A stretch of 64,000 bases of DNA from positions 1 through 64,000 of the IMG/VR virus record IMGVR_UViG_3300027782_000025; one strand, written 5' to 3'. Shown here in pieces: positions 307 to 62,621 of this stretch. The notes under the pieces were generated by a model. The model saw only the letters and a program-made list of their open reading frames with translations, had not been told where the DNA came from and ran no database searches. A program made the translations under genes and the position numbers. Positions within the stretch are counted from its first letter, which is position 1. The number at the start of each line of letters is the position of its first letter.

Positions 307-394
307 GAGAGGCGAGGGTGGTAGGGACCGGTGGTCCGGCCGCTCGGCTGGTTCGGTCCTGATGCCCTTGCGACACACACTGGAGGTTCTGATT

Positions 395-1017: not shown

Positions 1018-1112
1018 GGTATCGGTTTCCTGCGAGGAAAGTGGGGTTGCTGGGTGACCCCCCGTTTGTTACAGGCTTTTGGGTTTTAAACACACTTTTT
1101 AGGAGAGACGAA

Positions 1113-1301: not shown

Positions 1302-1354
1302 GATCGGTCTCCTGTGTGGGAGAGGGTGAGGAGATTGCTCCGCCCTCTCTTTTT
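1302..1354 (+). terminator. Repeated GATCGGTCTCCTGTGTGGG + hairpin terminator, copy 1
   Basis: Stem GAGAGGG/CCCTCTC, then T tract; homologous to 1879, 3941, 6897. Confidence 0.7.
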
Positions 1355-1931: not shown

Positions 1932-2048
1932 ATATCCATGGGATTTACAGCGGAGCCCCCGCTTGTTACAGAGAAGAGGCGGGGGGAGGCGGAGGCGACC
2001 AGTGTGGTGGCCGCGCTCCCCCCGCGAGACACACACGGAGAGTTTGCT

Positions 2049-2363
2049 ATGGGTAAGGTAATGAGGTCGGATGTGGTGAAGTTCAAGTCTTGGCTCAGTG
2101 AGCGCGTCGCGTGCCCTGAGGCCTCCGGTCACTTCGAGATCTGGGAATATGAGCCCTTCTGCGAAGTCCGGGACGAGTGGGACGACTTCGGCGAGCGAAA
2201 GCTCGTGTGGCAGATGAAGAGCTCGGACTACCTCTGCGAGGACGAGATCGACCCGAAGGCCAAGGATATCGCGCGTCTCCTGAAGGCCGTCAAAGACGAG
2301 TTCAAGCTGGTGGCGGCGAAGGACGACGAGCACACGTTCTACGCGGCTCGTCTCCCCCGATAA
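2049..2363 (+). CDS. Hypothetical, probable paralog of 5612-6058
   Basis: ACACACACGGAG leader; shares DVxxFKxWL..C and DD...VWQ motifs. Confidence 0.75.
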   Translation: MGKVMRSDVVKFKSWLSERVACPEASGHFEIWEYEPFCEVRDEWDDFGERKLVWQMKSSDYLCEDEIDPKAKDIARLLKAVKDEFKLVAAKDDEHTFYAARLPR

Positions 2364-2464
2364 TCCCTGGGGGTTGCGCCAGGGCTCCGGCTCTGGCGCT
2401 CTTCCCTTTTGTTTGTTACAGTGGTTTGCGGTTTTTTCCTTTTTTTCACACTGGAGGGTTTGCT

Positions 2465-2716
2465 ATGAGGACTTCTGAACTGGTTGACTTGTCTTTTGCT
2501 GAAATGGCTGATAAGCTTGTTGTGAAGTTTGGCCCTGCGCGGCCGAGCGAGAAGCTGATGAAGAAGGCGATCGTCTGGAGCGGGACTCACTTGAACGGTC
2601 TGTTCCTTGCGCACTATCACTTGAACGTGAAGTGCTTTGAGGACTCGGTGATGTGGCGCGAGCTGCTGCTCGAGGAGCTCAGGGCTGCCGCGGACAGGCG
2701 GTACGGGCAGGGATAA
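2465..2716 (+). CDS. Hypothetical early protein
   Basis: SD GGAGG after promoter 2414. Confidence 0.7.
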   Translation: MRTSELVDLSFAEMADKLVVKFGPARPSEKLMKKAIVWSGTHLNGLFLAHYHLNVKCFEDSVMWRELLLEELRAAADRRYGQG

Positions 2717-2823
2717 TACGGTTTCCAGAGAGGAAAACGCGGGGTTGCCGGTGGCGGCCCCGCTTGTTACAGAGAAAAGTGGAAGCCACAGTGGCGACCA
2801 AGAAACACACAAAGGAGAGAAAA

Positions 2824-3258
2824 ATGGCAGAAATGAATCTTGACCTTTTCCGTTTTAACAGCACTGAAGCCAGTTTGTCTTTTAGTTCGTTTCACGAGAA
2901 AAACTGCGAATTCGGTGGTGCAGAGTCTGGTGTAGGTGAGAATCGATGGTCTTATAACATCGAAAAAGACGGTTCGACAAATTACAAAGATGACTTTTTT
3001 GATAATGATCGATGCGGCGGAGGACCAGATGAATATAGTGACTCTTTAAGTGAACCTAGTCCAGTTCCTACAAAAGAAGATGCGATAAAAGAAATAGAGA
3101 GTTTAATCGAAGGCAAAAGAAAGACATTGGCCGATTTGGAAGCCTTCTTAACAGCTTTCCAGACTGCCCCAGGACCTTACACAGACTTGGGTGACTACTG
3201 GAAGTTCGAAGCTAGCGAGGACGAGGACGAGGACGAAGACGAAGACGAAGACGAATAG
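2824..3258 (+). CDS. Very acidic protein with (ED)n tail
   Basis: SD AGGAGAG; GARGAC hexamer repeat encodes EDEDEDEDEDEDE. Confidence 0.75.
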   Translation: MAEMNLDLFRFNSTEASLSFSSFHEKNCEFGGAESGVGENRWSYNIEKDGSTNYKDDFFDNDRCGGGPDEYSDSLSEPSPVPTKEDAIKEIESLIEGKRKTLADLEAFLTAFQTAPGPYTDLGDYWKFEASEDEDEDEDEDEDE

Positions 3259-3363
3259 TCCGGTTTCCAGAGAGGAAAGCGGGGTTGCCGCTGGTGACCC
3301 CGTTTGTTACAGAGAAAAGTGGAAGCCGCTGTGGTGACCACAGAACACACACGGAGAAAAGAA

Positions 3364-3600
3364 ATGTTTACAGCGCGAATCAGCGATGGGAAGACGTCAG
3401 GAAAACTGTTCAGCGGCAAGCAAGCCGTTAACATAATGAAAAAGGCGGCGATCGACGCCAAAAAGGGCAAGGGCGCTTTTCGCTTGGAGCTGAGCGAGAA
3501 CAACAGGCTTTGCGTGGTGGCCTTCGGCAAAACGGCAGTTGAAGCCGCGTCATATGGTGCGGCGATCCACAGAAAGGAAGTCAGGGAGGGCAGGCGCTAG
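3364..3600 (+). CDS. Hypothetical basic early protein
   Basis: Cassette promoter and ACACACGGAG leader. Confidence 0.75.
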   Translation: MFTARISDGKTSGKLFSGKQAVNIMKKAAIDAKKGKGAFRLELSENNRLCVVAFGKTAVEAASYGAAIHRKEVREGRR

Positions 3601-3688
3601 TCGACCGGAAAGGCCGGGGGTTGACAAAACGACCCCCGCTTGTTACAGGGTGATGGGTTCGGAAATCACACTTTCAAGGAGAGACGAA

Positions 3689-3931
3689 ATGACGACAAAA
3701 GAATGCCAGACAGTGAGACGACAAAGGGTCGAGTTCCAAATCGCCTTGGCCGGTAATTGTGACCAATGGGTTCCAGCCTGTGGCGGGACCGAGTTGCCTT
3801 TCCGATCAAGGTCTGGACGATCTTTGCACTACATGTACAACCCCCAGCAAAAACGCCACGCTTACCTTGACACCGCGACGGACGTGATTCTCACTGATCA
3901 AGAGGCGGACGCGTTCATGGAGCGTGTTTAA
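3689..3931 (+). CDS. Hypothetical phage protein (WVPACGGTE motif)
   Basis: SD AAGGAGAG, promoter 3621-3649. Confidence 0.75.
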   Translation: MTTKECQTVRRQRVEFQIALAGNCDQWVPACGGTELPFRSRSGRSLHYMYNPQQKRHAYLDTATDVILTDQEADAFMERV

Positions 3932-3940
3932 TTTTTAGGT

Positions 3941-3992
3941 GATCGGTCTCCTGTGTGGGGGAGGGTGAGGAGTTTGCTCCGCCCTCCCTTTT
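3941..3992 (+). terminator. Repeated terminator element, copy 3
   Basis: Stem GGGAGGG/CCCTCCC, T tract. Confidence 0.7.
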
Positions 3993-4115
3993 AAAAACAA
4001 AAGGCGCCTATTGCGCCGCGGGCCTCTGTCTGCTACAGAGGAGAGGCGGGGGAGACGAGGGCGGCCAGTGTGGCGGCCCCGGCCCCACCCGCAACACACA
4101 CAAAGGAGAGAAGAT

Positions 4116-4394
4116 ATGAGAATTGAAAGCGTGGTGGTCATCATTTGGGACGAAGTTGGAGAAAAGGCTTCGACCTTCCACGAAGCAGCCGACGGGACAG
4201 GGTTAGTCTTAGACCGCGACCTGACAACGGAAGAGCTAAACAATAACATAGAACTGAAGCTGTTCGGAAAAGACATCTCGTCTTGGCGAGCGACAGGGTA
4301 CATGGAGATCAACGACGTGACCATCATCACGTCGAAATCTGACCGCGGGCATCTGAGCACGACTCAGATCGTCTGGCTCGGGGCCGCTGAATAG
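4116..4394 (+). CDS. Hypothetical early protein
   Basis: SD AAGGAGAG. Confidence 0.7.
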   Translation: MRIESVVVIIWDEVGEKASTFHEAADGTGLVLDRDLTTEELNNNIELKLFGKDISSWRATGYMEINDVTIITSKSDRGHLSTTQIVWLGAAE

Positions 4395-4486
4395 TCGGTT
4401 TCCAAGGGAGGAAAGCGGGGTTGCGCAAACGACCCCCTTTTGTTACAAGATTCTGGGTTTGATAATCACACACAAAGGAGAAAGAG

Positions 4487-4720
4487 ATGTTAACACACGA
4501 GCTAGCTAAGCTGCTTCTTGAAGGCCCAGACGTCGAGATATCCGTCATGGCCGCGCCAGGGGTTACGAACTACATCCAAGGAATAACCTCGTTTTTGGCT
4601 GGCTCTTACCCTGCACCGTCTTGGGACGATGACGCAGGATCGATGAGAGATGTGGTTGTCCTGTTGGCTACCAGAGAAACCCTAAACGAAGACGAAGCTC
4701 TCGTCTTTTCAAAGAGCTAG
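4487..4720 (+). CDS. Hypothetical early protein
   Basis: Cassette promoter, SD AAGGAG. Confidence 0.7.
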   Translation: MLTHELAKLLLEGPDVEISVMAAPGVTNYIQGITSFLAGSYPAPSWDDDAGSMRDVVVLLATRETLNEDEALVFSKS

Positions 4721-4791
4721 CCTGATTGACAAACCGGCTCCCGTCTGCTACAATTTATCGGGGTTTCAAACACACTTTTTAGGAGATAGAA

Positions 4792-5022
4792 ATGGCTGTA
4801 AAATTCCCAGAAGTAAGCGTCAAATTAGTAGGAGAAGACGGAAACGCCTTCTCTATCCTCGGAAGGGTCAAAAAAGCTATGCGTCGAGCCAAGATCGAAA
4901 AAGACCAAATCGACGCCTACATGAACGACGCCATGAGCGGCGACTATAACCACCTCCTGCATGTGACTATGGAGACAGTATCCTGCGACACCGATGAAGA
5001 CGAAGAGTACGACGAGGAATAG
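4792..5022 (+). CDS. Conserved-type small phage protein (GxDGNAF...SGDY motif)
   Basis: Near-consensus promoter TTGACA-N17-TACAAT; motif recalled from phage hypotheticals. Confidence 0.75.
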   Translation: MAVKFPEVSVKLVGEDGNAFSILGRVKKAMRRAKIEKDQIDAYMNDAMSGDYNHLLHVTMETVSCDTDEDEEYDEE

Positions 5023-5117
5023 TTAGGTTTCCAACGAGGAAATGGGGTTGCGCAAGCCACCCCAGTTTGTTACAAGATTTTGGGTTTGATAAACACACTT
5101 TTTAAAGGAGCTTCAAA

Positions 5118-5510
5118 ATGGGATTAGACATGTGGGCCTTCGCAGTACCAAAAGACGCGGTAAAAATAGCCGCCACCGACGTCAAATTCGACGACGAGAC
5201 CGAAAAAGCGCAAGAGGAATTAGCCTGCTGGCGCAAACACCATGATCTACATGGATGGATGGAAAAACTCTACAACGAAAAAGGAGGAAAAGCGCTAAGC
5301 TTCAACTGCGTCACCGTCCAGCTCGAAGAAGAAGATCTGAACCGCCTCGAAGAAGACGTAAAAAGCAACCAGCTACCCCAAACCTCAGGGTTCTTCTTCG
5401 GCAACAACCCGCCCAATGACGACACCATCGAAGAAGACCTAGAGTTCGTCGAAAAAGCAAGAGAAGCGATCAAAGAAGGAAAAGTCGTCTACTACAACTC
5501 TTGGTGGTAA
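5118..5510 (+). CDS. Conserved-type phage protein (MGLDM...WRKH...GFFFG)
   Basis: Cassette promoter, SD AAGGAG; function unknown. Confidence 0.8.
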   Translation: MGLDMWAFAVPKDAVKIAATDVKFDDETEKAQEELACWRKHHDLHGWMEKLYNEKGGKALSFNCVTVQLEEEDLNRLEEDVKSNQLPQTSGFFFGNNPPNDDTIEEDLEFVEKAREAIKEGKVVYYNSWW

Positions 5511-5611
5511 CGCGGCCGACAATCTAACCAAAATAACGAACGGGATTGCGAACAGCGACCCCGTTCGTTACAGTATATCGGGATTCAAAACACTTTTCTA
5601 AAGGAAAACCG

Positions 5612-6058
5612 ATGAAAAAAGCACAAGTGACCAAAGCCGACGTCCTCAGATTCAAAGAATGGCTCGAAACCAAAATGACCTGCGAAAGAACCAACGTCGA
5701 CACCCGACACTATCCCGCCTTCCAAGAAATCCTTGAAGAATACGACGACAAGCCACCGGTTTGGCAAATCAAAAAGCCAAAGTCCTACAAATCAGCACAT
5801 AATTACCAAACCGGCGGAACACACGAACTAGGTCAAGGCGAAAGCTACGTCGACATCTGCGGCGAAAAATACATCCAAAACGATAAAGAAAATTTTGATA
5901 GCGACGACCCAAGGCGTAAAAACACCAAGCTGCTGTTCCAAAAGACCGCCAAGCTCACCGACCTCGCCTTCAGCTATTACTACTTGCCGCCTGAGCACAC
6001 CGTCCTAGAGGAATACCCACGCGTCTTCGTTAAGCCTTGGAACCGGAAAGAACGGTAA
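5612..6058 (+). CDS. Hypothetical, probable paralog of 2049-2363
   Basis: SD AAGGA; shared N-terminal motif. Confidence 0.75.
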   Translation: MKKAQVTKADVLRFKEWLETKMTCERTNVDTRHYPAFQEILEEYDDKPPVWQIKKPKSYKSAHNYQTGGTHELGQGESYVDICGEKYIQNDKENFDSDDPRRKNTKLLFQKTAKLTDLAFSYYYLPPEHTVLEEYPRVFVKPWNRKER

Positions 6059-6078
6059 ATAACCAAAAGGAGTAACAA

Positions 6079-6318
6079 ATGGACCCAAAGCTAATCAAAA
6101 CTGCGTTCAAAGCCTTCAAAAAAAGGCTAAAACTAACCCAACTGGTCGAAGATTCAAAGGTCAGCACAAGGCAAATGACCGGGGGAAGCACCAACGACAT
6201 CATCGCCATCCAACCCCCGGTTGACTTCCCCCCAGATGTCTGGAGAGAATTGGTGAAACAGGGGAAGCTAAAACAAGCCGGGGGAGGACTATTAGAATTG
6301 GTCCCCCAGAACCGGTAG
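6079..6318 (+). CDS. Small protein resembling a Planctomycetota-type hypothetical family
   Basis: AFKAFKKRLKLT...IIAIQPP..FPPDVWRELVKQGKL; family recalled from memory, unverified. Confidence 0.65.
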   Translation: MDPKLIKTAFKAFKKRLKLTQLVEDSKVSTRQMTGGSTNDIIAIQPPVDFPPDVWRELVKQGKLKQAGGGLLELVPQNR

Positions 6319-6362
6319 ATAGTATTGTAAGTCTAGTGTTGTTTTAAATCCAGGAGCAGAAA

Positions 6363-6632
6363 ATGCGAATTTATCAGTTAGTAGACGGCGACAAGACCTT
6401 TCACTTCTTCAGGACGAAAGCAGAAGCTAAACAGGCTAAATCCGCTCTCGTCACAATTTACCGGGATTTGGACGCGGAAGAAAAAGCTCAGAAGCTCGAG
6501 ATTCTCAAAGACCAGCCCACTGAAGTAGAAGTACCGACCAACAAGGATAAATTCCTGGTTTGGTTGACTGACTACACCAAAAAGGTCCGCGTTTGTGCTA
6601 CCCCTTGTCAGGCTCAATCGACACTGGGATAA
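6363..6632 (+). CDS. Hypothetical protein
   Basis: SD AGGAG. Confidence 0.7.
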   Translation: MRIYQLVDGDKTFHFFRTKAEAKQAKSALVTIYRDLDAEEKAQKLEILKDQPTEVEVPTNKDKFLVWLTDYTKKVRVCATPCQAQSTLG

Positions 6633-6696
6633 TTGCCAAGGGCTTTCTCCTTGTTACAGGGTTTTGGGTTCGAAACACTAGCCAAGGAGATTTGAA

Positions 6697-6882
6697 ATGT
6701 ACAAGATAATCAGATTCTCAGCGATTGGCATGTCGAAGGTTATCAAGACTGTTGATACTCTTGAGGAGGCTCGGGCACATTGCGAAGACCCTGAGACTAG
6801 CTCTCGGACTTGCACTTCTGACGAGGGTTTGGAACTGACATCGAGTATTGGCTCTTGGTTTGATGGTTACACCGAGTGCTAA
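6697..6882 (+). CDS. Hypothetical early protein
   Basis: Promoter 6633-6660, SD AAGGAG. Confidence 0.7.
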   Translation: MYKIIRFSAIGMSKVIKTVDTLEEARAHCEDPETSSRTCTSDEGLELTSSIGSWFDGYTEC

Positions 6883-6896
6883 ACAATTTTTAGGGG

Positions 6897-6949
6897 ATCG
6901 GTCTCCTGTGTGGGGGAAGGTGAGGAGTTTGCTCCGCCTTCCCTTTTTT
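6897..6949 (+). terminator. Repeated terminator element, copy 4
   Basis: Stem GGGAAGG/CCTTCCC (compensatory change vs copy 3), T tract. Confidence 0.7.
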
Positions 6950-7033
6950 CATATATATTGCGTCCGTGGCTCCGCTTGTTACAAGGGAGCATGGAAGGCC
7001 ACTGTGGCCTCCCGAAACACACGGAGCGACGAC

Positions 7034-7231
7034 ATGTTTTACGTTTTCAACCGAGCAGGCGACGCCGGCTATCACGAGATAAAGAACGAAAAAGGTGAGG
7101 TCATAGCGGACGCCTATGATACCGAGGAACAAGCCAGAGGTACGTTGGAAGCTCTGGGCCTTCCCTCTGACGATCTCGAGATCGTCTACGACCAAGCACA
7201 GTGGGACAACATCGGCTTGGAATATCGCTAG
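7034..7231 (+). CDS. Hypothetical acidic early protein
   Basis: ACACACGGAG leader. Confidence 0.7.
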   Translation: MFYVFNRAGDAGYHEIKNEKGEVIADAYDTEEQARGTLEALGLPSDDLEIVYDQAQWDNIGLEYR

Positions 7232-7331
7232 ACGACGGCGGCGGCGGGGTTGCACCAGCGGCCCCTGTCTGCTACAAAGAGGAAGCGGAGGCCGACGTGG
7301 CAACCGCAAAACACACACACGGAGAAAAGAA

Positions 7332-7658
7332 ATGAAGATCAAAGAGCTAATCTACAGAGACACGCAGAACTCCATTCTCTGCGACGAACGAAGCGAGCTA
7401 TTGGCGCTGTTCAGCGTCGAGCATGATGGGCACCAAGGTCATCTCCTTTATGAGGCGACCATCGACAGGCACAACACCGACTCTGAGTGCTATTGCGACA
7501 TCGAAAGCGTAACAAAGGACACGATTGCTTACGACGGTGCCATCGTCGACGCGCTCAACATCGACGTCTGGAAAATGGTGCCGAAATACACCAAAGACAC
7601 CGCCACCGACGACGAAGTATGGAAAAAGCTCGGTAAGCTCTGGGTCAGTCCAATATAG
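7332..7658 (+). CDS. Hypothetical, paralog of 12711-13085
   Basis: Shared LxALFSVxHxGxxGxxLYEAT and YxCDIxSxT motifs. Confidence 0.75.
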   Translation: MKIKELIYRDTQNSILCDERSELLALFSVEHDGHQGHLLYEATIDRHNTDSECYCDIESVTKDTIAYDGAIVDALNIDVWKMVPKYTKDTATDDEVWKKLGKLWVSPI

Positions 7659-7751
7659 TCCGGTTTCCAAGGAGGAAAGCGGGGTTGCCTCTGGTGGCCC
7701 CGTTTGTTACAAAGTATTAGGGAATTAACACGCACCTCAAGGAGAGACAAA

Positions 7752-8156
7752 ATGAATGATTTAACTGTTCTTATCAAAGCCGGCTATGTCGCCACAGAGG
7801 CTTCCACCTCATTCGCTATGTATCACTTCCTCAACCAAAGTGGTGAAAAAGTAATAATCAAGCAAGAACAAGACGCTAACGAAAATCAAGACTGGGTAGT
7901 CACAATCGACGGTAGTCAGCAACGCGGAGAAGAATGGTTTACCAAGTATTGTGAAGAAGTCGACGAAGACAAAGAAGAAGACGCATGCGAGGCATCTGAA
8001 AATGATGTTTTATTCTGGCTTGAATGTTTTGTTTTCTTCGGTTCGCAGGATGGGGAAACCACTATCGATTTCTCGACTTTCGCTTGGGCCAAGGGGATCG
8101 CTGAAAGAAGGCAAGCCCAAGACAATGATATCTTCTCTACCGTCAGTATAGTTTAA
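7752..8156 (+). CDS. Hypothetical, tandem duplicate A
   Basis: MNDLTVLIKAG...; high similarity to 8182-8580. Confidence 0.8.
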   Translation: MNDLTVLIKAGYVATEASTSFAMYHFLNQSGEKVIIKQEQDANENQDWVVTIDGSQQRGEEWFTKYCEEVDEDKEEDACEASENDVLFWLECFVFFGSQDGETTIDFSTFAWAKGIAERRQAQDNDIFSTVSIV

Positions 8157-8181
8157 TACCACACTTTCAAGGAGAAACGAA

Positions 8182-8580
8182 ATGAATGATTTAACTGTTC
8201 TTATCAAAGCCGGTCAAATCTGCCTGCCCGCAGCACTTGGCTGCCCCACAGTCAGTATATTCCACTTCCTCAACCAAGATGGCGAAAAAGTAATAATCAA
8301 GCTAGGCGGAGACATAGATTATTACGAAAAACCGGTCTGGACAGTCACAATCGACGGTAGTCAGCAACGCGGAGAAGCATGGTTACAAAAGTATTGCTGC
8401 ATGGGTTATAAACCCTGGCTCGACTGCAGTGATGTTTTATTCTGGCTTGAATGTTTCGTTTTTTTCGGTTCAAAGGACGAAGACTCTACTATCGATTTTT
8501 CGACTTTCGTCTGGGCTAAGGGGATCGCTGAAAGAAGACAAAACATAGAAAATGAAATCTTCGACATCAGTATAGTTTAA
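8182..8580 (+). CDS. Hypothetical, tandem duplicate B
   Basis: About 430-bp tandem duplication including the leader. Confidence 0.8.
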   Translation: MNDLTVLIKAGQICLPAALGCPTVSIFHFLNQDGEKVIIKLGGDIDYYEKPVWTVTIDGSQQRGEAWLQKYCCMGYKPWLDCSDVLFWLECFVFFGSKDEDSTIDFSTFVWAKGIAERRQNIENEIFDISIV

Positions 8581-8605
8581 TACCACATTTTCAAGGAGAA
8601 ACGAA

Positions 8606-9166
8606 ATGAAAAAACGACAATCTTGGACAAGAAAACACGCGGCTGTCCTCGCAGAATGCTTCTTCGGTGACGAAGCCGCGATGCTAAAAGCCGCGCTAGA
8701 ATTCGAACAAAACGGAGAATACTGGTTTCCGCCAGAAGGAGGAATCCGCGACATGTTCAAATACATCATCGGCAGTGCGTTAAGATCCACATTCTGGACC
8801 AAAACAATACTGCATCTCGATAAAGACAGACGCATTGAAAGCCGCATAAATCTAAAAGACGTTACCGATATCAGCAAAATCACTGAGAAACTAAAGCTGT
8901 CTCGGTCAGTCCCACTCTATAAGGGCAACGAACTTGTCGGATACGCGATAAGTGCGAGAGATCATGATTTCCTGCAAAAAATCCTTGAATACGCGAAAAG
9001 CACACTGCCAATAGAAGAACCCCGAAGCGTGGCCAGAGTAAAATACCAACGACTAAAAACCGGCTTACCCGGCCTCAGGGGGGTTACGCCGCCGCCTCGG
9101 CCTGTTACAGTGATAAGAGAGGGGGCCGCAGTGGCGCCCGCAGGATACACACGGAGATCAAAATGA
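8606..9166 (+). CDS. Hypothetical protein
   Basis: SD AAGGAG; 3' end runs through the next promoter cassette. Confidence 0.7.
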   Translation: MKKRQSWTRKHAAVLAECFFGDEAAMLKAALEFEQNGEYWFPPEGGIRDMFKYIIGSALRSTFWTKTILHLDKDRRIESRINLKDVTDISKITEKLKLSRSVPLYKGNELVGYAISARDHDFLQKILEYAKSTLPIEEPRSVARVKYQRLKTGLPGLRGVTPPPRPVTVIREGAAVAPAGYTRRSK

Positions 9167-9732
9167 AAGACCAAAAGAAATTCTGGATGTACGATCTAGG
9201 TGTAGTTGGCCAAGAAATTAAAATACTCCTCCCGTACAACGACGAGGACGAGGAGAACGTGGATGAAGAAGAGGGCGTGGGAGCACACCAAAACATCAAA
9301 GACAACCTAGCACAGCTTGGGCCGATCAACATACGAAACGGGATTGTTTTCGAAGGTTCTGAAGATCTACAGTCAACAATGGTGAAAAACGAACTTTGGA
9401 CCGGAAGGGTCACGGCAGCAGAATCCACACACTACGCGGGTGACAATATAGATGAAACGGATTTCGAATTCTGGATAGATCCGGAGGACCTTCCTAAGCT
9501 CTTGGAAATAAGTACAGCCTTAGCCAAACAATATTCTGAAGAGCTCGAAAGAGTCTACAGAAACTACGCAAGATCGAAAGGACGAACAATCGAAGAATTA
9601 GATAAAGAAGACAAAGAGAAAGAAGGGTGTGAGCAGCCACTTGGCTGGGACGGACCACATCGAGAACGAGCTAACTCTACAAAATTTGCCATTGGGTCTG
9701 CGGCCGGCGGGATTCATGTCGGAAAGCTATAA
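9163..9732 (+). CDS. Hypothetical acidic protein
   Basis: ACACACGGAG leader. Confidence 0.75.
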   Translation: MKDQKKFWMYDLGVVGQEIKILLPYNDEDEENVDEEEGVGAHQNIKDNLAQLGPINIRNGIVFEGSEDLQSTMVKNELWTGRVTAAESTHYAGDNIDETDFEFWIDPEDLPKLLEISTALAKQYSEELERVYRNYARSKGRTIEELDKEDKEKEGCEQPLGWDGPHRERANSTKFAIGSAAGGIHVGKL

Positions 9733-9811
9733 AATGAACTGGGGGGTTGCACAAGCAGCCCCCGTTTGTTACAACATTTCGGATTTGAAACACACTTTTA
9801 GGAGAACCGAA

Positions 9812-9961
9812 ATGAAGATCAAAGCAACCGTCTCCGGCCAGTTCAACACGCACCGACCATCAACCGGCCATAAAAGCCTGAGCGGAACGGTCCTAAGAGA
9901 CCGAAGGCTCCGTCGGCTTTCAACAAGGGCAGCCCAGCGAAAAGCTGCCCTCAGCGACTAG
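9812..9961 (+). CDS. Small basic peptide (49 aa)
   Basis: Cassette promoter, SD AGGAG; Arg-rich C-terminus. Confidence 0.65.
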   Translation: MKIKATVSGQFNTHRPSTGHKSLSGTVLRDRRLRRLSTRAAQRKAALSD

Positions 9962-10497
9962 TCCATATAATCATTGGGACTTCTGTCATTATGGCCATCA
10001 TCGGCTTCATGGCTGTCTCTTAGCGCGTCATCGAATGCTGTGGTTCCTGAGGGGTTTATTGGTTGTTCGTGGATTATGCTCATCCCTACTTTGTCCATTA
10101 GGTCTTTGCCTTCCATCGATGTCGTTATGATGTCTATGTATTCCCCGGTTTCTGGGTCTTGGCGCTGGAAGTTATTTATCCCTTTGAAGTCATCGAATTC
10201 TACCGTATGTGACTCTCCACCGTCTTCATCGTAGTCGCCTTCGACTTTAGTGTCTACTACAAGCGTTCCACTGTAGAGCACGCCGTCTTTTTCGAATTCT
10301 TCGAAGGTATATTCGAAATTACCATAGTATTGTCTTGGACTTCCTAGGCCCTGGCCGGTCTGCATTGACGCCCCTGGCTGTTGTTCTGGTTGTTGTTCAG
10401 GCCTTACTTGTCCTGGCATATTGATTTCATCTACGTTTTCAGTGATGAATGACGCGATTTGATTTACATCATATTCTGGTCTGTTGATATTCTTCAT
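9958..10497 (-). CDS. Acidic hypothetical protein
   Basis: SD AAGGAG; stop overlaps the opposing stop in CTAG 9958-9961; N-terminal ..IASFITE/N leader-like motif. Confidence 0.75.
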   Translation of the reverse strand: MKNINRPEYDVNQIASFITENVDEINMPGQVRPEQQPEQQPGASMQTGQGLGSPRQYYGNFEYTFEEFEKDGVLYSGTLVVDTKVEGDYDEDGGESHTVEFDDFKGINNFQRQDPETGEYIDIITTSMEGKDLMDKVGMSIIHEQPINPSGTTAFDDALRDSHEADDGHNDRSPNDYMD

Positions 10498-10527
10498 CTG
10501 TTTTCTCCTTTAAATTTTATTTTTCAT

Positions 10528-10599
10528 TGGGACGGGTGGGGATCGAACCCACTTCCTTAGTGTTATGAGCACTCTGCTCGGCCGTTGAGCTTCCGTCCC
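10528..10599 (-). tRNA. tRNA with CAT anticodon (elongator Met or Ile2), atypical, no encoded CCA
   Basis: Acceptor GGGACGG/CCGTCCC, D stem GCTC/GAGC, anticodon loop CTCATAA, T arm GTGGG-TTCGATC-CCCAC, discriminator A. Confidence 0.85.
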
Positions 10600-10611
10600 T
10601 CTAGCCAATAT

Positions 10612-10836
10612 CTACGCCAAAATCTTTTCAGCACTGATCAGCCTGCTCACTTGGTAGACAAGCTCGTCATCCACCGTACATCCCCTTTCGTAAACATCTA
10701 GGGAATCAGCTAGATCTCTGTCCTTAAACTTCTTTATAGCAAACCAGTGAGCCTCAGGCACGGTTTTGAAAGGTCCATATGTTCTCGGGACCACAGCCTG
10801 GCCCCCACAGCCGAATTCTACTACTATGAACATCAT
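10612..10836 (-). CDS. Hypothetical, paralog of 11602-11793
   Basis: SD AAGGAG; shared RT(Y/F)GPFxT..EAH and LVYQV/PVYQV motifs. Confidence 0.75.
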   Translation of the reverse strand: MMFIVVEFGCGGQAVVPRTYGPFKTVPEAHWFAIKKFKDRDLADSLDVYERGCTVDDELVYQVSRLISAEKILA

Positions 10837-10903
10837 TATCTCCTTGAAAAAGTGTCCGAAACCCCCAAAATACTGTGACAGACCAGAGCCGAAAATGCAA
10901 TGG

Positions 10904-11191
10904 TCATATCCTATAGAAATGGTATGACCAATCGAAACCACGGTCCCACCAGAAACCATGTTCCTTTGCCACTTTGTTCAGCCTATCAACATCCATATCA
11001 TCCTTACCAGCTGGGATATATCCATTTAATAATTCATAAAGCGGCCCCTCACATATCAGTGTAAAGGTTGAACCGTTTCCGACCTTTTCGTTTCGGTCTG
11101 CCCATTCTTCTTTGCTATAGATCTTGGTGTCTTCATATTTCTCGGCAAGACCATTTAAAACTTCGAGCATTTTTCCTTCATCGTAAGGCAT
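10904..11191 (-). CDS. Hypothetical early protein
   Basis: Cassette promoter 11230-11258 on -, SD AAGGAG. Confidence 0.75.
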   Translation of the reverse strand: MPYDEGKMLEVLNGLAEKYEDTKIYSKEEWADRNEKVGNGSTFTLICEGPLYELLNGYIPAGKDDMDVDRLNKVAKEHGFWWDRGFDWSYHFYRI

Positions 11192-11269
11192 TAGTTCTTC
11201 TCCTTGAAAAAGTGTTAAATCTCCGAGACCCTGTAACAAAATGGGGTTGCTGCGTCAACCCCTTAGGAA

Positions 11270-11440
11270 TTAGATCTCAGTGTACGCGACACTGGCCTTC
11301 TTTCCAAACATCGCCTGAGCCGTTTTCTCGGCTTGGTTTTGGCCGGTAGACCGAATGTAAAAATTCGCGACTTCAACACCTTTTTCGTCATAAACGATAA
11401 AAACTTTGGTGCCTTTACCGACGAACTTGATTTCACTCAT
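11270..11440 (-). CDS. Small hypothetical protein (56 aa, not in ORF track)
   Basis: MSEIKFVGKGTKVFIVYDEKG...AYTEI; CACACTTTTAGGAGA leader and promoter 11481-11509. Confidence 0.75.
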   Translation of the reverse strand: MSEIKFVGKGTKVFIVYDEKGVEVANFYIRSTGQNQAEKTAQAMFGKKASVAYTEI

Positions 11441-11480
11441 TTTTTCTTCTCCTAAAAGTGTGATTTTCTAACCCCAAAAC

Positions 11481-11551
11481 CCTGTAGCAAGCCGAGAAGC
11501 CTTTGTAAACAGTGTTTGAGGGTTTACAGGCGGGCGCCGGCTTGTTACAGG
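11481..11551. promoter_or_regulatory. Divergent promoter pair
   Basis: TTTACA-N17-TACAGG on both strands, -35 boxes 13 bp apart. Confidence 0.75.
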
Positions 11552-11601
11552 GAGAGGAGCGGGGACCGCAGTGGTGACCGCGAAACACACGGAGTAGAAA
11601 A

Positions 11602-12297: not shown

Positions 12298-12390
12298 TCG
12301 GTTTCCAAGGAGGAAAGCTGGGGGTTGCCCCAGCAGCCCCGTCTGTTACAAAGTATTGGGTTCGGAAATCACACTTTTAGGAGAAGAAAA

Positions 12391-13925: not shown

Positions 13926-15053
13926 ATGATGAATACTGTAGTAATGCAATCGGCCAGCCTCTACTTCAAAGACAATGTAAGTGACAAAGTCTACAACGTC
14001 ACCCTCGAAGAAGCAGATGGTGGATACATCGTCAACTGCTCATGGGGTAGACGAGGCGGAGCCTTACAAAGTGCCACGCAAACCAAATCCCCAGTATCCA
14101 TCGACAAAGCCATCGCCATCTACCATAAAAAACTATCCGAAAAAACCTCTAAAGGATACATGCCCACCTCCGACACCGGCAGAACACTCGGCAACTCCAT
14201 AACCGTGCCCGACACCGATAAACCATTCGAACCAATCTGTAACCTACTAAACCCTATAAACGAATACCAACTCAAACAACTGCTAATAGACGACTCTTGG
14301 ATCATGCAAGAAAAAATGGACGGCGTGCGCATGATCCTCACGCGCAAAGGCGACAGCATCACCGCAGTCAGCCGAACAGGACGCGAAGCCACAATCCCCC
14401 AAGAAGTACACGACACCCTCATCAAGACCTCAGTCCAGAACTACATCATCGACGGAGAACTAGTCGGCGACGTCTACCACGTATTCGACCTCCTAAGACT
14501 CCAAGCAATGGACTTCGCGGCCAAGAATACCTTCGAAGAAAGATATGAAGCACTCGTCGAACTACTCAACGGCATCGACGACACCAACGTCAAAGTCGTG
14601 AAGACCCACTCAGGCTACGACAAAACCCAGGCCTTCGAAGACCTTAAATCCGCCGAAGGCGTGGTGTTCAAGCACAAAAACGCGTTCTATAAGGCTGGTA
14701 GACCATCAAGCGGTGGCGGATACTTGAAATACAAGTTCTACAAAAGCTGCAGCGCTCTGGTCACCGGGATAAATGACAAAAGGTCTATAGCCCTGAGTTT
14801 AATCGAAGACATGCCAGAGCACGGTAGCGAATATGTCGTCGGTAGAAGGCTCATATCAGTAGGGAACTGCACCATCCCCGTGAATTATGACTTCCCACAA
14901 AATGGTGACATCGTTGAGATTAAATACCTCTATGCTCGGAAGCCTAGCAACGCGCTCTACCAGCCGAGCTACCTTGGTAAAAGGACGGACATCCAGCTTA
15001 AGGATGTCCTATTGTCGCAGCTCATCTATAAGGTGGGTGAGGAAGAGGAATAG
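13926..15053 (+). CDS. WGR domain + ATP-dependent DNA ligase
   Basis: SDKVY...WGRRG...K..EK..KGY (WGR); QEKMDGVR (KxDG), DGEL, FDLL, EGVVFK motifs; C-terminal OB fold. Confidence 0.85.
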   Translation: MMNTVVMQSASLYFKDNVSDKVYNVTLEEADGGYIVNCSWGRRGGALQSATQTKSPVSIDKAIAIYHKKLSEKTSKGYMPTSDTGRTLGNSITVPDTDKPFEPICNLLNPINEYQLKQLLIDDSWIMQEKMDGVRMILTRKGDSITAVSRTGREATIPQEVHDTLIKTSVQNYIIDGELVGDVYHVFDLLRLQAMDFAAKNTFEERYEALVELLNGIDDTNVKVVKTHSGYDKTQAFEDLKSAEGVVFKHKNAFYKAGRPSSGGGYLKYKFYKSCSALVTGINDKRSIALSLIEDMPEHGSEYVVGRRLISVGNCTIPVNYDFPQNGDIVEIKYLYARKPSNALYQPSYLGKRTDIQLKDVLLSQLIYKVGEEEE

Positions 15054-22627: not shown

Positions 22628-23275
22628 CTAACCACCTCGGGAGCCAGAATAACCACCGCGCTTATCAGCAAGCACCTCACCGTCCCTAAACTTAGCATAT
22701 CCCTTAAAACCCATCCCCGATTCAAAATAACGTAGTTTAAAAGTAAGAAATGAAAAACGATTAGACATGATTTGGAGCGCCTCAACCGGGGGCGTCCAGG
22801 CAGTGTTAAAAGTGTAGAATAAACAAGCCTGATCATCAGGACCAGTCGTCTCACTGAAAATAGTAGACTCAGAAGTATCCCACTTAGTGCCCCAGTGATG
22901 GATGCGCCAGGTATACCAGGTCTTATGACCATAAAGATCATGATTTTTCTTATAGATAACAAGCGCCTCCTTGATCGCCTCCCTATTACCCTCCGGCTGC
23001 AGCGCCATAAACTTATCGAACGCGGCGACCCGGTCATCGCCCTCGAATTCATAAAGCGTCTTGATCATCGCGAACTGTTCATCTGAACCGTATACAATAT
23101 CAAAGACAATCTCCTTAGAACTCGCTTGGGCATCAGCCAGCGACGCTGGGGTGGGAACGATGTTATTGATCTTAAAAACAGAATCATCGTCCGGGCACTT
23201 AAGTGCAAGCTTAAACTCCTGGACCTTATCTGCTGGGCCAATAACTTTTAAATCACATTCGCACCAGTTAGGCAT
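22628..23275 (-). CDS. DUF1281/YubB ferredoxin-like protein
   Basis: MPNWC...WYTWRIHHWGTKW...FNTAWTPP motifs. Confidence 0.75.
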   Translation of the reverse strand: MPNWCECDLKVIGPADKVQEFKLALKCPDDDSVFKINNIVPTPASLADAQASSKEIVFDIVYGSDEQFAMIKTLYEFEGDDRVAAFDKFMALQPEGNREAIKEALVIYKKNHDLYGHKTWYTWRIHHWGTKWDTSESTIFSETTGPDDQACLFYTFNTAWTPPVEALQIMSNRFSFLTFKLRYFESGMGFKGYAKFRDGEVLADKRGGYSGSRGG

Positions 23276-62213: not shown

Positions 62214-62621
62214 ATGTTTGACAATAAATTACAGCCGATTCTAGAAGCGCTTGATAAAATAAAGAATGTCGTAATACTCTTGGCGCACAAGCGCCATATA
62301 TTGCTCGGACTTAGCAAGCACAATGATTTTAGAAAGGATAAATGGACCTTCATTGGCGGCACTATAAAAAATAGTGAAAACCCGTTCCAAGCCGCTCTTA
62401 GAGAAGCTAAAGAAGAATGTGGCTTAGAAATTAAAATTAGTAATGAGAGCAAGATAGTTGGTAATGTCATGTTTATGCTAGCTACTCCAAGATATAGCTC
62501 GCTTAAACTAAAACATAATTCTGAATTTAAAGCCATGGGCTTCTTCGATAAGGCAGGCATTAAGAGTCTTAAACTCGCGCCTAAAGTCTTGGAAACCATT
62601 AAAGAATTCCGCGTTTTTTAA
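62214..62621 (+). CDS. Nudix hydrolase
   Basis: GGTIKNSENPFQAALREAKEECGL Nudix box; alternative start 62202. Confidence 0.9.
   Translation: MFDNKLQPILEALDKIKNVVILLAHKRHILLGLSKHNDFRKDKWTFIGGTIKNSENPFQAALREAKEECGLEIKISNESKIVGNVMFMLATPRYSSLKLKHNSEFKAMGFFDKAGIKSLKLAPKVLETIKEFRVF

What the first reader, a model, noticed from the sequence alone, without database searches (positions are those of the whole stretch)
1985..11595. Conserved 5'UTR RNA motif in a subset of early genes
Seen in at least 7 leaders: GG-NR-RCC-[pentaloop]-GGY-RR-CC followed by ACACAC(A/G)..GGAG. Examples: GGCGACC-AGTGT-GGTGGCC (1994), GGAAGCC-ACAGT-GGCGACC (2782), GGAAGCC-GCTGT-GGTGACC (3321), GGCGGCC-AGTGT-GGCGGCC (4060), GGAAGGCC-ACTGT-GGCCTCC (6991), GGAGGCC-GACGT-GGCAACC (7288), GGGGGCC-GCAGT-GGCGCCC (9122), GGGGACC-GCAGT-GGTGACC (11562). 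The loop always starts with a purine and ends GU. GCC/GGC covaries with ACC/GGT, and most copies keep a purine-rich 2x2 internal loop. Other cassettes use a different U-rich leader (TTTTGGGTT..AAACACACTTTT.AGGAG). Inference: a translational operator defining a sub-regulon.
Basis: partly seen in the sequence, partly recalled or inferred. Interest (0 to 1): 0.65.

Follow-up and report, generated by a model that had tools for sequence, protein, structure and literature searches.

The report
5'-end hairpin leader of phage early genes
Eight early genes of an uncultured freshwater T4-like jumbo phage begin their mRNAs with a conserved GC-rich hairpin placed exactly at the predicted transcript start, most likely an ordinary 5'-end protecting and expression module rather than a translational operator.

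Summary
Eight copies of GGNNNCC-N5-GGNNNCC lie at the stated places (within 2 nt), all on the sense strand, against 0 in shuffles. Each lies between a sigma70-type extended -10 promoter (TTGMNN-N17-TGYTACA) and an ACACAC-GGAG-ATG ribosome site.

Forty-two distinct copies from the window and related freshwater phage contigs keep the helix: 81% of cells pair against 33-50% when slid, with compensatory changes and G.U wobbles. It is therefore an RNA structure. Rfam holds nothing like it, and it occurs only in this phage clade.

The operator reading is weak:
- The stem base starts 5-7 nt after the -10 hexamer in most of about 50 distinct leaders, whatever the hairpin length. That is the predicted +1.
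- The stem ends about 9-13 nt before an unpaired Shine-Dalgarno (SD) sequence.
- Orthologous genes carry the hairpin leader in one phage and the unstructured U-rich leader in another.

Best reading: a 5'-terminal stem-loop leader like that of T7 gene 10 or ompA. It is one of two interchangeable leader modules in PeSL-like (composite terminator/promoter) early cassettes. Function is inferred; no transcript start was mapped. It is a new member of a known kind, of moderate to low interest.

The parts
1979..2025 (+). Class A leader, long form. A 47-nt helix (GCGGGGGGAG...CUCCCCCCGC) carries the core hairpin 1994-2012 at its tip. Promoter -35 is 1944-1949, -10 is TACAGA 1967-1972, SD is 2037-2040, ATG is 2049 (104-aa ORF to 2363).
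   Evidence: MFE -39.2 kcal/mol, z -3.3
2780..2800 (+). Class A leader, short form. Core is GGAAGCC-ACAGU-GGCGACC (2781-2799) with a 2x2 AA/GA loop. The -10 is 2768-2773 and ATG is 2824 (144 aa).
   Evidence: MFE -8.8, z -3.6
3320..3340 (+). Class A leader. Core is GGAAGCC-GCUGU-GGUGACC (3321-3339). Its G.U pair is G-C in orthologues L001 and L075. The -10 is 3308-3313 and ATG is 3364 (78 aa).
4046..4092 (+). Class A leader, long form. A 47-nt helix has the core GGCGGCC-AGUGU-GGCGGCC (4060-4078) at its tip. The -10 is 4034-4039 and ATG is 4116 (92 aa).
   Evidence: MFE -32.3, z -3.2
6993..7013 (+). Class A leader, 8-bp form: GGAAGGCC-ACUGU-GGCCUCCC with one A.C mismatch. It is fully paired in relatives. 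The -10 is 6980-6985 and ATG is 7034 (65 aa).
7285..7307 (+). Class A leader: GCGGAGGCC-GACGU-GGCAACCGC (core 7287-7305). The -10 is 7273-7278 and ATG is 7332 (108 aa).
   Evidence: MFE -13.3, z -3.0
9119..9141 (+). Class A leader. Core is GGGGGCC-GCAGU-GGCGCCC (9121-9139) with a G.G mismatch. The -10 is 9106-9111 and ATG is 9163 (189 aa). Orthologues in L065 and L020 use a class B leader.
11559..11581 (+). Class A leader: GCGGGGACC-GCAGU-GGUGACCGC (core 11561-11579). The -10 is 11546-11551 and ATG is 11602 (63 aa).
312..371 (+). A related but different structured 5' leader: a 60-nt helix that starts 5-6 nt after the -10 of the promoter at 298. It is followed by GACACACACUGGAGG and ATG 395. 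The hairpin model does not hit it.
   Evidence: MFE -39, z -2.0
1082..1112 (+). Example of the alternative class B leader (GGUUUUAAACACACUUUUUAGGAG), which is unstructured. Other copies follow the promoters at 1379, 3641, 4441, 4746, 5068, 6652, 9767, 11824, 12344, 13136, 13883, 15110 and 16373.
   Evidence: z +0.1 to +1.7

Best explanation
The motif is a 5'-terminal stem-loop. Host sigma70 RNA polymerase starts at an extended -10 promoter (TGYTACANN), and the first transcribed nucleotides form the base of the hairpin. At most about 0-2 nucleotides are left unpaired at the 5' end. Behind the hairpin lie an unstructured A/C-only spacer (GAAACACAC...) and an exposed GGAG ribosome site.

Inferred mechanism: a base-paired 5' end denies access to 5'-end-dependent decay enzymes (an RppH-type pyrophosphohydrolase, then RNase E/G, or RNase J). 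The lack of U-rich single strand removes the usual cleavage sites, and the open CA-rich spacer keeps translation initiation efficient. Class A messages would then be the long-lived, well-translated early messages. Class B messages, with an unstructured U-rich leader, would be the short-lived ones.

The hairpin leader is one of two interchangeable leader modules in composite terminator-promoter-leader cassettes. These cassettes resemble the PeSLs of T4-type phages and are reshuffled between genes by recombination.

Shown here: the structure, its covariation, its position relative to the promoter and the SD, its restriction to promoters, and module swapping. Inferred: the transcript start and the effect on stability.
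For: - Helix is real. Eight copies against 0 expected. In 42 distinct copies 81% of cells pair against 33-50% slid. There are 38 double-change cells against 12 in shuffles. Pair 3-23 reads CG16/GC8/UA8 and pair 8-18 reads GC28/AU7/GU6. G.U pairs and sense-strand restriction show it acts as RNA.
- Anchored to the promoter. All 8 genome hits and all sense-strand hits in 22 related loci sit behind a TGYTACA or TGTTATA -10.
- Stem base at +1. The first paired base of the outermost helix is 5-7 nt after the -10 hexamer in about 45 of 50 distinct leaders, from 19-nt to about 50-nt hairpins. The sigma70 start is normally the 7th nt after the hexamer (established knowledge).
- Open ribosome site. Class A folds have the hairpin at position 1-2 and, in 8 of 9, a free spacer and SD (z -1.0 to -3.6). 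Class B leaders are less structured than shuffles. The spacer contains almost only A and C.
- Known parallel. The T7 phi10 transcript starts with an 8-bp stem and pentaloop at +1, then an open spacer and SD. That stem-loop raises expression and mRNA abundance when placed upstream of an RBS (PMC6146998).
- Known mechanism. RppH and RNase E need single-stranded 5' ends, which explains the long-known stabilising effect of 5' structures. B. subtilis RppH needs at least 2 unpaired nucleotides (PMC3997798).
- Swapping. Orthologues swap leader class, as expected of a generic expression module.
Against: - No transcript 5' end was mapped. The only RNA data are assembled metatranscriptome contigs, which cannot show starts and may contain DNA.
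- Features beyond pairing are conserved: loop position 1 is R in 42/42, position 4 is G in 39/42, position 5 is U in 37/42, and the mismatches are always purine-purine. A pure stabiliser would not need these. Part of this comes from the search pattern and from shared descent.
- The short hairpins are only moderately stable (-8.7 to -13 kcal/mol). Two have z near -1.
- The host and its RNases are unknown.
Confidence: 0.5

Rival explanations
1. The hairpin is the binding site of a trans-acting phage or host RNA-binding protein. It tags a subset of early mRNAs for timed translational repression or activation, or for antitermination (operator, or nut/put-like).
For: - Conserved non-Watson-Crick features: R-N-N-G-U loop, and purine-purine 2x2 or G.G mismatches at a fixed place in the stem. 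Such mismatches widen the major groove in known peptide-binding RNAs (established knowledge).
- Only a subset of promoters carries the hairpin.
- It is promoter-proximal, as nut and put sites are.
Against: - It does not overlap the SD or AUG and leaves them unpaired.
- Three different stem architectures coexist, including fully paired stems.
- Loops such as ACAGC, GCUGG, GAUCC and ACUCC occur in relatives.
- Leader class swaps between orthologues.
- No RegA or RegB homologue is present.
- Class A genes are single-gene units each followed by their own terminator-promoter cassette, so no long operon needs antitermination.
Confidence: 0.2
2. The element acts during transcription. A GC-rich hairpin forming in the first 20-25 nt of nascent RNA helps promoter escape or blocks backtracking and promoter-proximal pausing, which sets promoter output rather than mRNA fate.
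For: Fixed position at +1 regardless of hairpin length. The purine-rich discriminator GAGARRAG between the -10 and the stem is also conserved.
Against: No direct evidence. Class B promoters share the same core promoter without the hairpin. The idea does not explain the co-varying change from a U-rich to an A/C-only spacer.
Confidence: 0.1
3. The element acts as double-stranded DNA. The palindrome GGnnnCC-N5-GGnnnCC at +1 to +20 is an operator for a dimeric repressor, or a recombination site for cassette shuffling.
For: The invariant positions (GG, CC, GG, CC) are symmetric as DNA. It sits where a repressor would block RNA polymerase. PeSL authors speculated that GGGG...CCCC stems may be protein targets in recombination (PMC2839356).
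Against: - G.U wobbles in the stem and at the loop-closing position would be A.C mismatches on the other strand.
- Variable positions change in a compensatory way rather than staying fixed.
- Long forms extend the helix outward with the base kept at +1.
- The model scores the sense strand 25-37 bits and the antisense strand at most about 21 bits.
Confidence: 0.06
4. The hairpin has no function of its own. It is a passenger of duplicated intergenic cassettes, and its similarity reflects recent copying.
For: The whole cassettes are repeated and shuffled. Many copies are near-identical between contigs.
Against: Pairing is kept through one-sided and two-sided changes in diverged copies, and three stem architectures all preserve a helix at the same place. 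The observed covariation score is far above the shuffled value and above every slid register.
Confidence: 0.08

Closest known systems
T7 gene 10 (phi10) 5' stem-loop and other 5'-terminal stabilising hairpins (E. coli ompA leader type)
   Same: - The hairpin starts at +1: 8-bp stem and pentaloop in T7, GGGAGACC-ACAAC-GGUUUCCC.
- It is followed by an unstructured spacer and a strong SD.
- The window's 8-bp form, GGRAGGCC-RYUGU-GGYCUCCC, has the same size and even the same GGGAG start.
- Known effect: more mRNA and protein (PMC6146998). General mechanism: PMC3997798.
   Different: - It is transcribed from host-type sigma70 promoters, not by T7 RNA polymerase.
- It sits on early ORFan genes, not late structural genes.
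- Most copies carry a purine-purine internal loop.
- There is no sequence kinship: T7 scores 10.6 bits against 25-37 for members.
- The spacer is CA-rich, not AU-rich.
- Function is untested here.
PeSL cassettes (promoter-early stem-loops) of T4-type phages (PMC2839356, PMC4122927)
   Same: - It is a T4-type phage with a Gp23 capsid protein.
- Dense arrays of small ORFan genes are each flanked by a conserved composite element. The element holds a strong sigma70-like promoter, a GGGG...CCCC stem-loop between or over the -35 and -10 boxes, and ends in an SD and start codon.
- Gene and cassette combinations differ between close relatives.
   Different: - The PeSL stem-loop is the terminator in or upstream of the promoter. 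The hairpin studied here is an extra element downstream of the -10, inside the transcript.
- Two alternative leader modules have not been described for PeSLs in the two papers read.
- Mini-circle formation was not tested.
Phage translational operators (T4 RegA sites, MS2 coat-protein hairpin, T4 gp32 and gp43 operators)
   Same: A short RNA element in the 5' region of several phage mRNAs. It would define a post-transcriptional regulon.
   Different: Those operators overlap the SD or AUG (established knowledge). This hairpin ends about 9-13 nt upstream of the SD and about 18-24 nt before the AUG, and leaves them free. No RegA homologue was found.
Lambda nut boxB and HK022 put antitermination RNAs
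   Same: A promoter-proximal hairpin with a 5-nt loop in early transcripts.
   Different: boxB loops are purine-only GNRA-like folds next to a boxA (established knowledge). Here the loop is R-N-N-G-U with free middle positions. No Rfam hit appears even at E up to 1. The downstream units are single genes.

Membership tests
5'-terminal stabilising stem-loop (ompA or T7g10 type) | The stem begins at, or within about 2-4 nt of, the transcript 5' end | tested here: met
   The first paired base lies 5-7 nt after the -10 hexamer in about 45 of 50 distinct leaders. This is measured against the predicted start, not a mapped one.
5'-terminal stabilising stem-loop (ompA or T7g10 type) | It lengthens mRNA half-life by blocking 5'-end-dependent decay | not testable with these tools
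   This needs half-life measurements. Only metatranscriptome contigs are available.
5'-terminal stabilising stem-loop (ompA or T7g10 type) | The effect depends on pairing, not on loop sequence | tested here: inconclusive
   Stem pairs covary and loop positions 2-3 are free, but loop positions 1, 4 and 5 and the purine mismatches are conserved.
T7 phi10 stem-loop (sequence family) | Scores as a member of the same covariance model | tested here: not met
   10.6 bits on the sense strand against 25-37 bits for members.
PeSL cassette of T4-type phages | A sigma70-like early promoter with a G-run/C-run stem-loop between or over the -35 and -10 boxes, ending in an SD and ATG | tested here: met
   GGGGTTGC...CCCC holds the -35 and is followed by TTTGTTACA. 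Description in PMC2839356.
PeSL cassette of T4-type phages | Lies in a T4-type phage, next to ORFans in variable regions, with shuffling between relatives | tested here: met
   Gp23 capsid protein, E 5e-79. Class A gene products have no Pfam or PHROG family. Leader and gene combinations differ between relatives.
PeSL cassette of T4-type phages | The studied hairpin is the PeSL stem-loop itself (a terminator or attenuator) | tested here: not met
   It lies downstream of the -10 and is followed by GAAACACAC with no U-run. The terminator-like stem is a separate element upstream.
Translational operator (RegA, MS2 coat, gp32 type) | The operator overlaps or sequesters the SD or start codon | tested here: not met
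   The stem ends mostly 9-13 nt before the SD, and the SD and AUG are unpaired in nearly all folds.
Translational operator (RegA, MS2 coat, gp32 type) | A cognate repressor is encoded by the phage | tested here: inconclusive
   There is no PF01818 (RegA) or PF10715 (RegB) match. The RegA control rang nowhere, the record is about 70% complete, and an unknown protein could serve.
nut boxB or put antitermination RNA | A GNRA-like purine pentaloop with boxA, or a two-stem put fold | tested here: not met
   The loop consensus is R-N-N-G-U. No Rfam match appears at E up to 1.
Any Rfam 15 family | A match to a curated covariance model | tested here: not met
   Only tRNA-Met at 10528-10599 is found.

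The most novel reading that the evidence does not exclude
The hairpin, with its fixed purine-purine mismatch and R-N-N-G-U loop, is a recognition tag read by an unknown phage or host factor. It may work together with the four 3'-UTR 'anti-leader' boxes (GGUCUCCUGUGUGGG) that can pair with the CACAC-GGAGA ribosome sites. On this reading the two leader classes are two separately timed post-transcriptional regulons of early genes in an uncultured jumbo phage.
Probability: 0.15. Interest if true: 0.65.

Novelty: new member of a known kind. Interest (0 to 1): 0.35.

Why it matters
The result gives a clean, covariation-supported RNA element that Rfam lacks. It also gives a full parts list (promoter, terminator, two leader types, ribosome site) for the early-gene cassettes of a widespread but uncultured freshwater T4-like jumbo phage clade. 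If the two leader types set different mRNA lifetimes, a phage could tune early gene dosage by swapping small modules. The hairpin, CA spacer and SD would then be a compact natural expression part. The finding does not open a new kind of mechanism unless a specific binding factor exists.

Tried and rejected
- Rfam, at gathering threshold and at E up to 1: only a tRNA.
- Near-identity and protein searches of the phage collection with the early region, one large ORF and the ligase: no relatives.
- Pattern scan of GTDB genomes: 10 single hits, all chance. None has a promoter or a helix.
- The hairpin model on the closest capsid relative, the 595-kb uncultured phage LR756511.1: nothing.
- Pfam and PHROGs on the nine genes behind structured leaders: nothing significant.
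- RegB and RegA homologues: none.
- Class B as a second 5' hairpin (GUUUUG-GGUU-CGAAAC): rejected. Most variants do not fold, and from the predicted +1 they are less structured than shuffles.
- GC content of class A against class B genes: no difference (0.52 against 0.49, p 0.17).
- Metatranscriptome data: run X5 holds contigs identical to 2219-7244.

Full report
Context. The window is the first 64 kb of a 274,625-bp virus record with 40% GC. The phage encodes a Gp23-type major capsid protein (E 5e-79). Its best relative is an uncultured 595-kb phage at 39% identity, and classical T4-likes are at about 30%. It is therefore a distant, uncultured T4-type jumbo phage. DNA runs and contigs holding it are all from freshwater or lake metagenomes.

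Promoters and leaders. The first 32 kb or so is a dense array of small genes. About 40 of them lie behind a promoter of one design, TTGMNN, a 16-17 nt spacer that includes TG, then TACANN. The scan tool itself calls two of them TTGACA-17-TACAAT with an extended TG. Between the -10 and the ATG there are two main leader types.

Checking the observation. GGNNNCCNNNGTGGNNNCC occurs at seven sense-strand sites, against zero in 100 shuffles. An eighth copy with 8-nt arms lies at 6993-7013. In all eight the loop is R-N-N-G-U and the hairpin is followed by an A/C-rich stretch (ACACAC), GGAG and ATG. Four copies have a 2x2 purine internal loop, three a single G.G and one an A.C, so 'most' should read 'half'. 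A covariance model built from 42 copies finds exactly these eight sites in the whole genome, all on the + strand.

Is the hairpin an RNA structure? A pattern scan found one IMG/VR contig and about 25 related metagenome contigs with the same promoters and leaders. Forty-two distinct hairpins were aligned without gaps.
- For the 10-pair helix, 81% of cells pair, against 33-50% in slid registers.
- Thirty-eight cells have changes on both sides, against 12 in shuffles.
- The covariation score is 0.274 against 0.148 in shuffles, and 0 of 500 shuffles reach it.
- Pair 3-23 reads CG16/GC8/UA8. Pair 8-18 reads GC28/AU7/GU6.
- The central position is purine-purine in 33 of 42.
- G.U wobbles, the one-strand restriction and orthologous G.U-to-G-C changes (3321 against L001 and L075) show selection on the RNA, not on a DNA palindrome.
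Two caveats apply. The copies are related by descent, and the retrieval pattern fixed GG, CC and GUGG. Copies found only by their promoter do show other loops, such as ACAGC, GCUGG, GAUCC and ACUCC, and fully paired 8-bp stems.

Where the hairpin sits. Every hit of the model in the genome, and every sense-strand hit in 22 related loci, lies behind a -10 box. The first paired base of the outermost helix is 5, 6 or 7 nt after the -10 hexamer in about 45 of 50 distinct leaders. This holds for 19-nt hairpins and for helices of about 50 nt that carry the same core at the tip (1979-2025 and 4046-4092). Sigma70 polymerase normally starts at about the 7th nucleotide after the hexamer, so the stem base coincides with +1. 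On the other side the stem ends mostly 9-13 nt before GGAG (range 2-23). The spacer is almost purely A and C.

Folds. Folded from the predicted +1, class A leaders place the hairpin at nucleotides 1-2. The spacer, SD and start region stay open in nearly all of them (8 of 9 minimum-energy folds). MFE is -8.7 to -39 kcal/mol and z is -1.0 to -3.6. Class B leaders have MFE of 0 to -3.7 and z of +0.1 to +1.7, so they are less structured than shuffles.

What this argues.
- The geometry is that of a 5'-terminal stem-loop leader. The best-known phage example was checked here: the T7 phi10 transcript, whose start is annotated at 22904, begins GGGAGACC-ACAAC-GGUUUCCC. That is an 8-bp stem and pentaloop at +1, followed by an open spacer and SD. 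It is used to raise mRNA abundance and expression (PMC6146998).
- RppH and RNase E need single-stranded 5' ends, which explains the stabilising effect of 5' structure (PMC3997798).
- T7's hairpin is not a sequence relative. It scores 10.6 bits against 25-37 bits for members. This is 'works like', not 'is a member of'.
- The operator reading fits poorly. The element does not overlap or sequester the ribosome site, its fine structure comes in three forms, and no RegA or RegB homologue is present.

Leader class is not tied to gene identity.
- Gene 9163 has a class A leader here, but class B leaders in L065 (85% amino-acid identity) and in L020.
- Gene 4116 has the long A form here, a short A form in L001 and a B leader in L064 and L076.
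- The window's class B gene 6697 has class A orthologues.
- Eight of 15 orthologue clusters that contain a class A leader also contain class B.

Cassette context. After each stop codon come a GGTTTCC-N5-GGAAA hairpin, then a GGGGTTGC...CCCC hairpin that contains the -35 box, then a T-run that runs into TGYTACA. This is the layout of the PeSLs of T4-type phages, composite terminator/promoter cassettes that flank ORFans and mediate modular shuffling (PMC2839356, PMC4122927). The hairpin studied here is an additional transcribed component not described in those papers. Class A gene products have no Pfam or PHROG family and do not differ in GC from class B genes.

Verdict. It is confined to this phage clade: it is absent from GTDB genomes and from the nearest capsid relative. 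The most likely function is 5'-end protection combined with an open, CA-rich ribosome site (confidence 0.5). It is one of two swappable leader modules. A specific binding factor remains possible (0.2), because of the conserved loop ends and purine mismatches. Nothing was measured at the RNA level: the metatranscriptome contigs that match cannot show ends. This is a new member of a known kind.

Noticed in passing
window 1306-1320, 1881-1895, 3945-3959, 6900-6914 (+): The box GGTCTCCTGTGTGGG occurs four times, against 0.04 expected. Each copy lies directly 5' of a strong intrinsic terminator. It is complementary to the leader and SD sequence CACAC(A)GGAGAC (duplex -14 to -17 kcal/mol). Read on the minus strand, terminator plus box look like a class-A-type leader without a promoter or ORF. 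It may be a 3'-UTR anti-SD element or a relic of an inverted cassette.
   Followed up: partly
window, e.g. 2720-2773, 3262-3313, 4398-4449, 5026-5076, 7662-7713, 9742-9775, 12300-12352: The intergenic cassettes have a fixed order: stop codon, GGTTTCC-N5-GGAAA hairpin (18 hits against 0.4 expected), a GGGGTTGC...CCCC hairpin that holds the -35 box, then TTTGTTACA holding the extended -10. This is a composite terminator/promoter like the PeSLs of T4-type phages.
   Followed up: partly
window 1082-1112 and 13 other leaders (see parts): Class B leaders (RTWTTGGGTTYGRAA-CACAC-U-run-AGGAG) are conserved in sequence. They are less structured than dinucleotide shuffles (z +0.1 to +1.7), as if selected to be open.
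   Followed up: partly
window 312-371 (+): A third structured leader: a 60-nt helix at the first promoter of the genome (298). It is conserved in L001 and L022 and is not hit by the hairpin model.
   Followed up: partly
window 7752-8156 and 8182-8580 (+): Two tandem paralogous genes with identical 5' ends (MNDLTVLIKAG...). The second gene, and the next one at 8606, have only the 3' half of a class B leader (CCACACTTTCAAGGAG) and no promoter.
   Followed up: no
window 10528-10599 (-): A tRNA-Met (anticodon CAT) gene inside the early region, among minus-strand genes that have class B leaders.
   Followed up: no
window 62271-62483 (+): A NUDIX hydrolase domain in a 180-aa open frame (E 5.7e-11). 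Whether it acts on RNA 5' ends is unknown.
   Followed up: no
window 13926-15053 (+): An ATP-dependent DNA/RNA ligase with an N-terminal WGR domain, behind a class B leader.
   Followed up: no
window 3216-3255 (+): An Asp/Glu codon repeat at the end of gene 2824-3258 attracts many unrelated contigs. It gives a false depth spike in all four runs.
   Followed up: no
G000:C1:110386-111636 (-), outside the window: A Gp23-type major capsid protein. The nearest relative is the uncultured 595-kb phage LR756511.1 (39% identity), and T4-likes are at about 30%.
   Followed up: partly
G000:C1 about 202008 onward (+), outside the window: A tandem repeat of ACTCCGACAGCT, coding a Pro/Thr/Ala-rich stretch if read in frame, seen in the promoter listing.
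   Followed up: no
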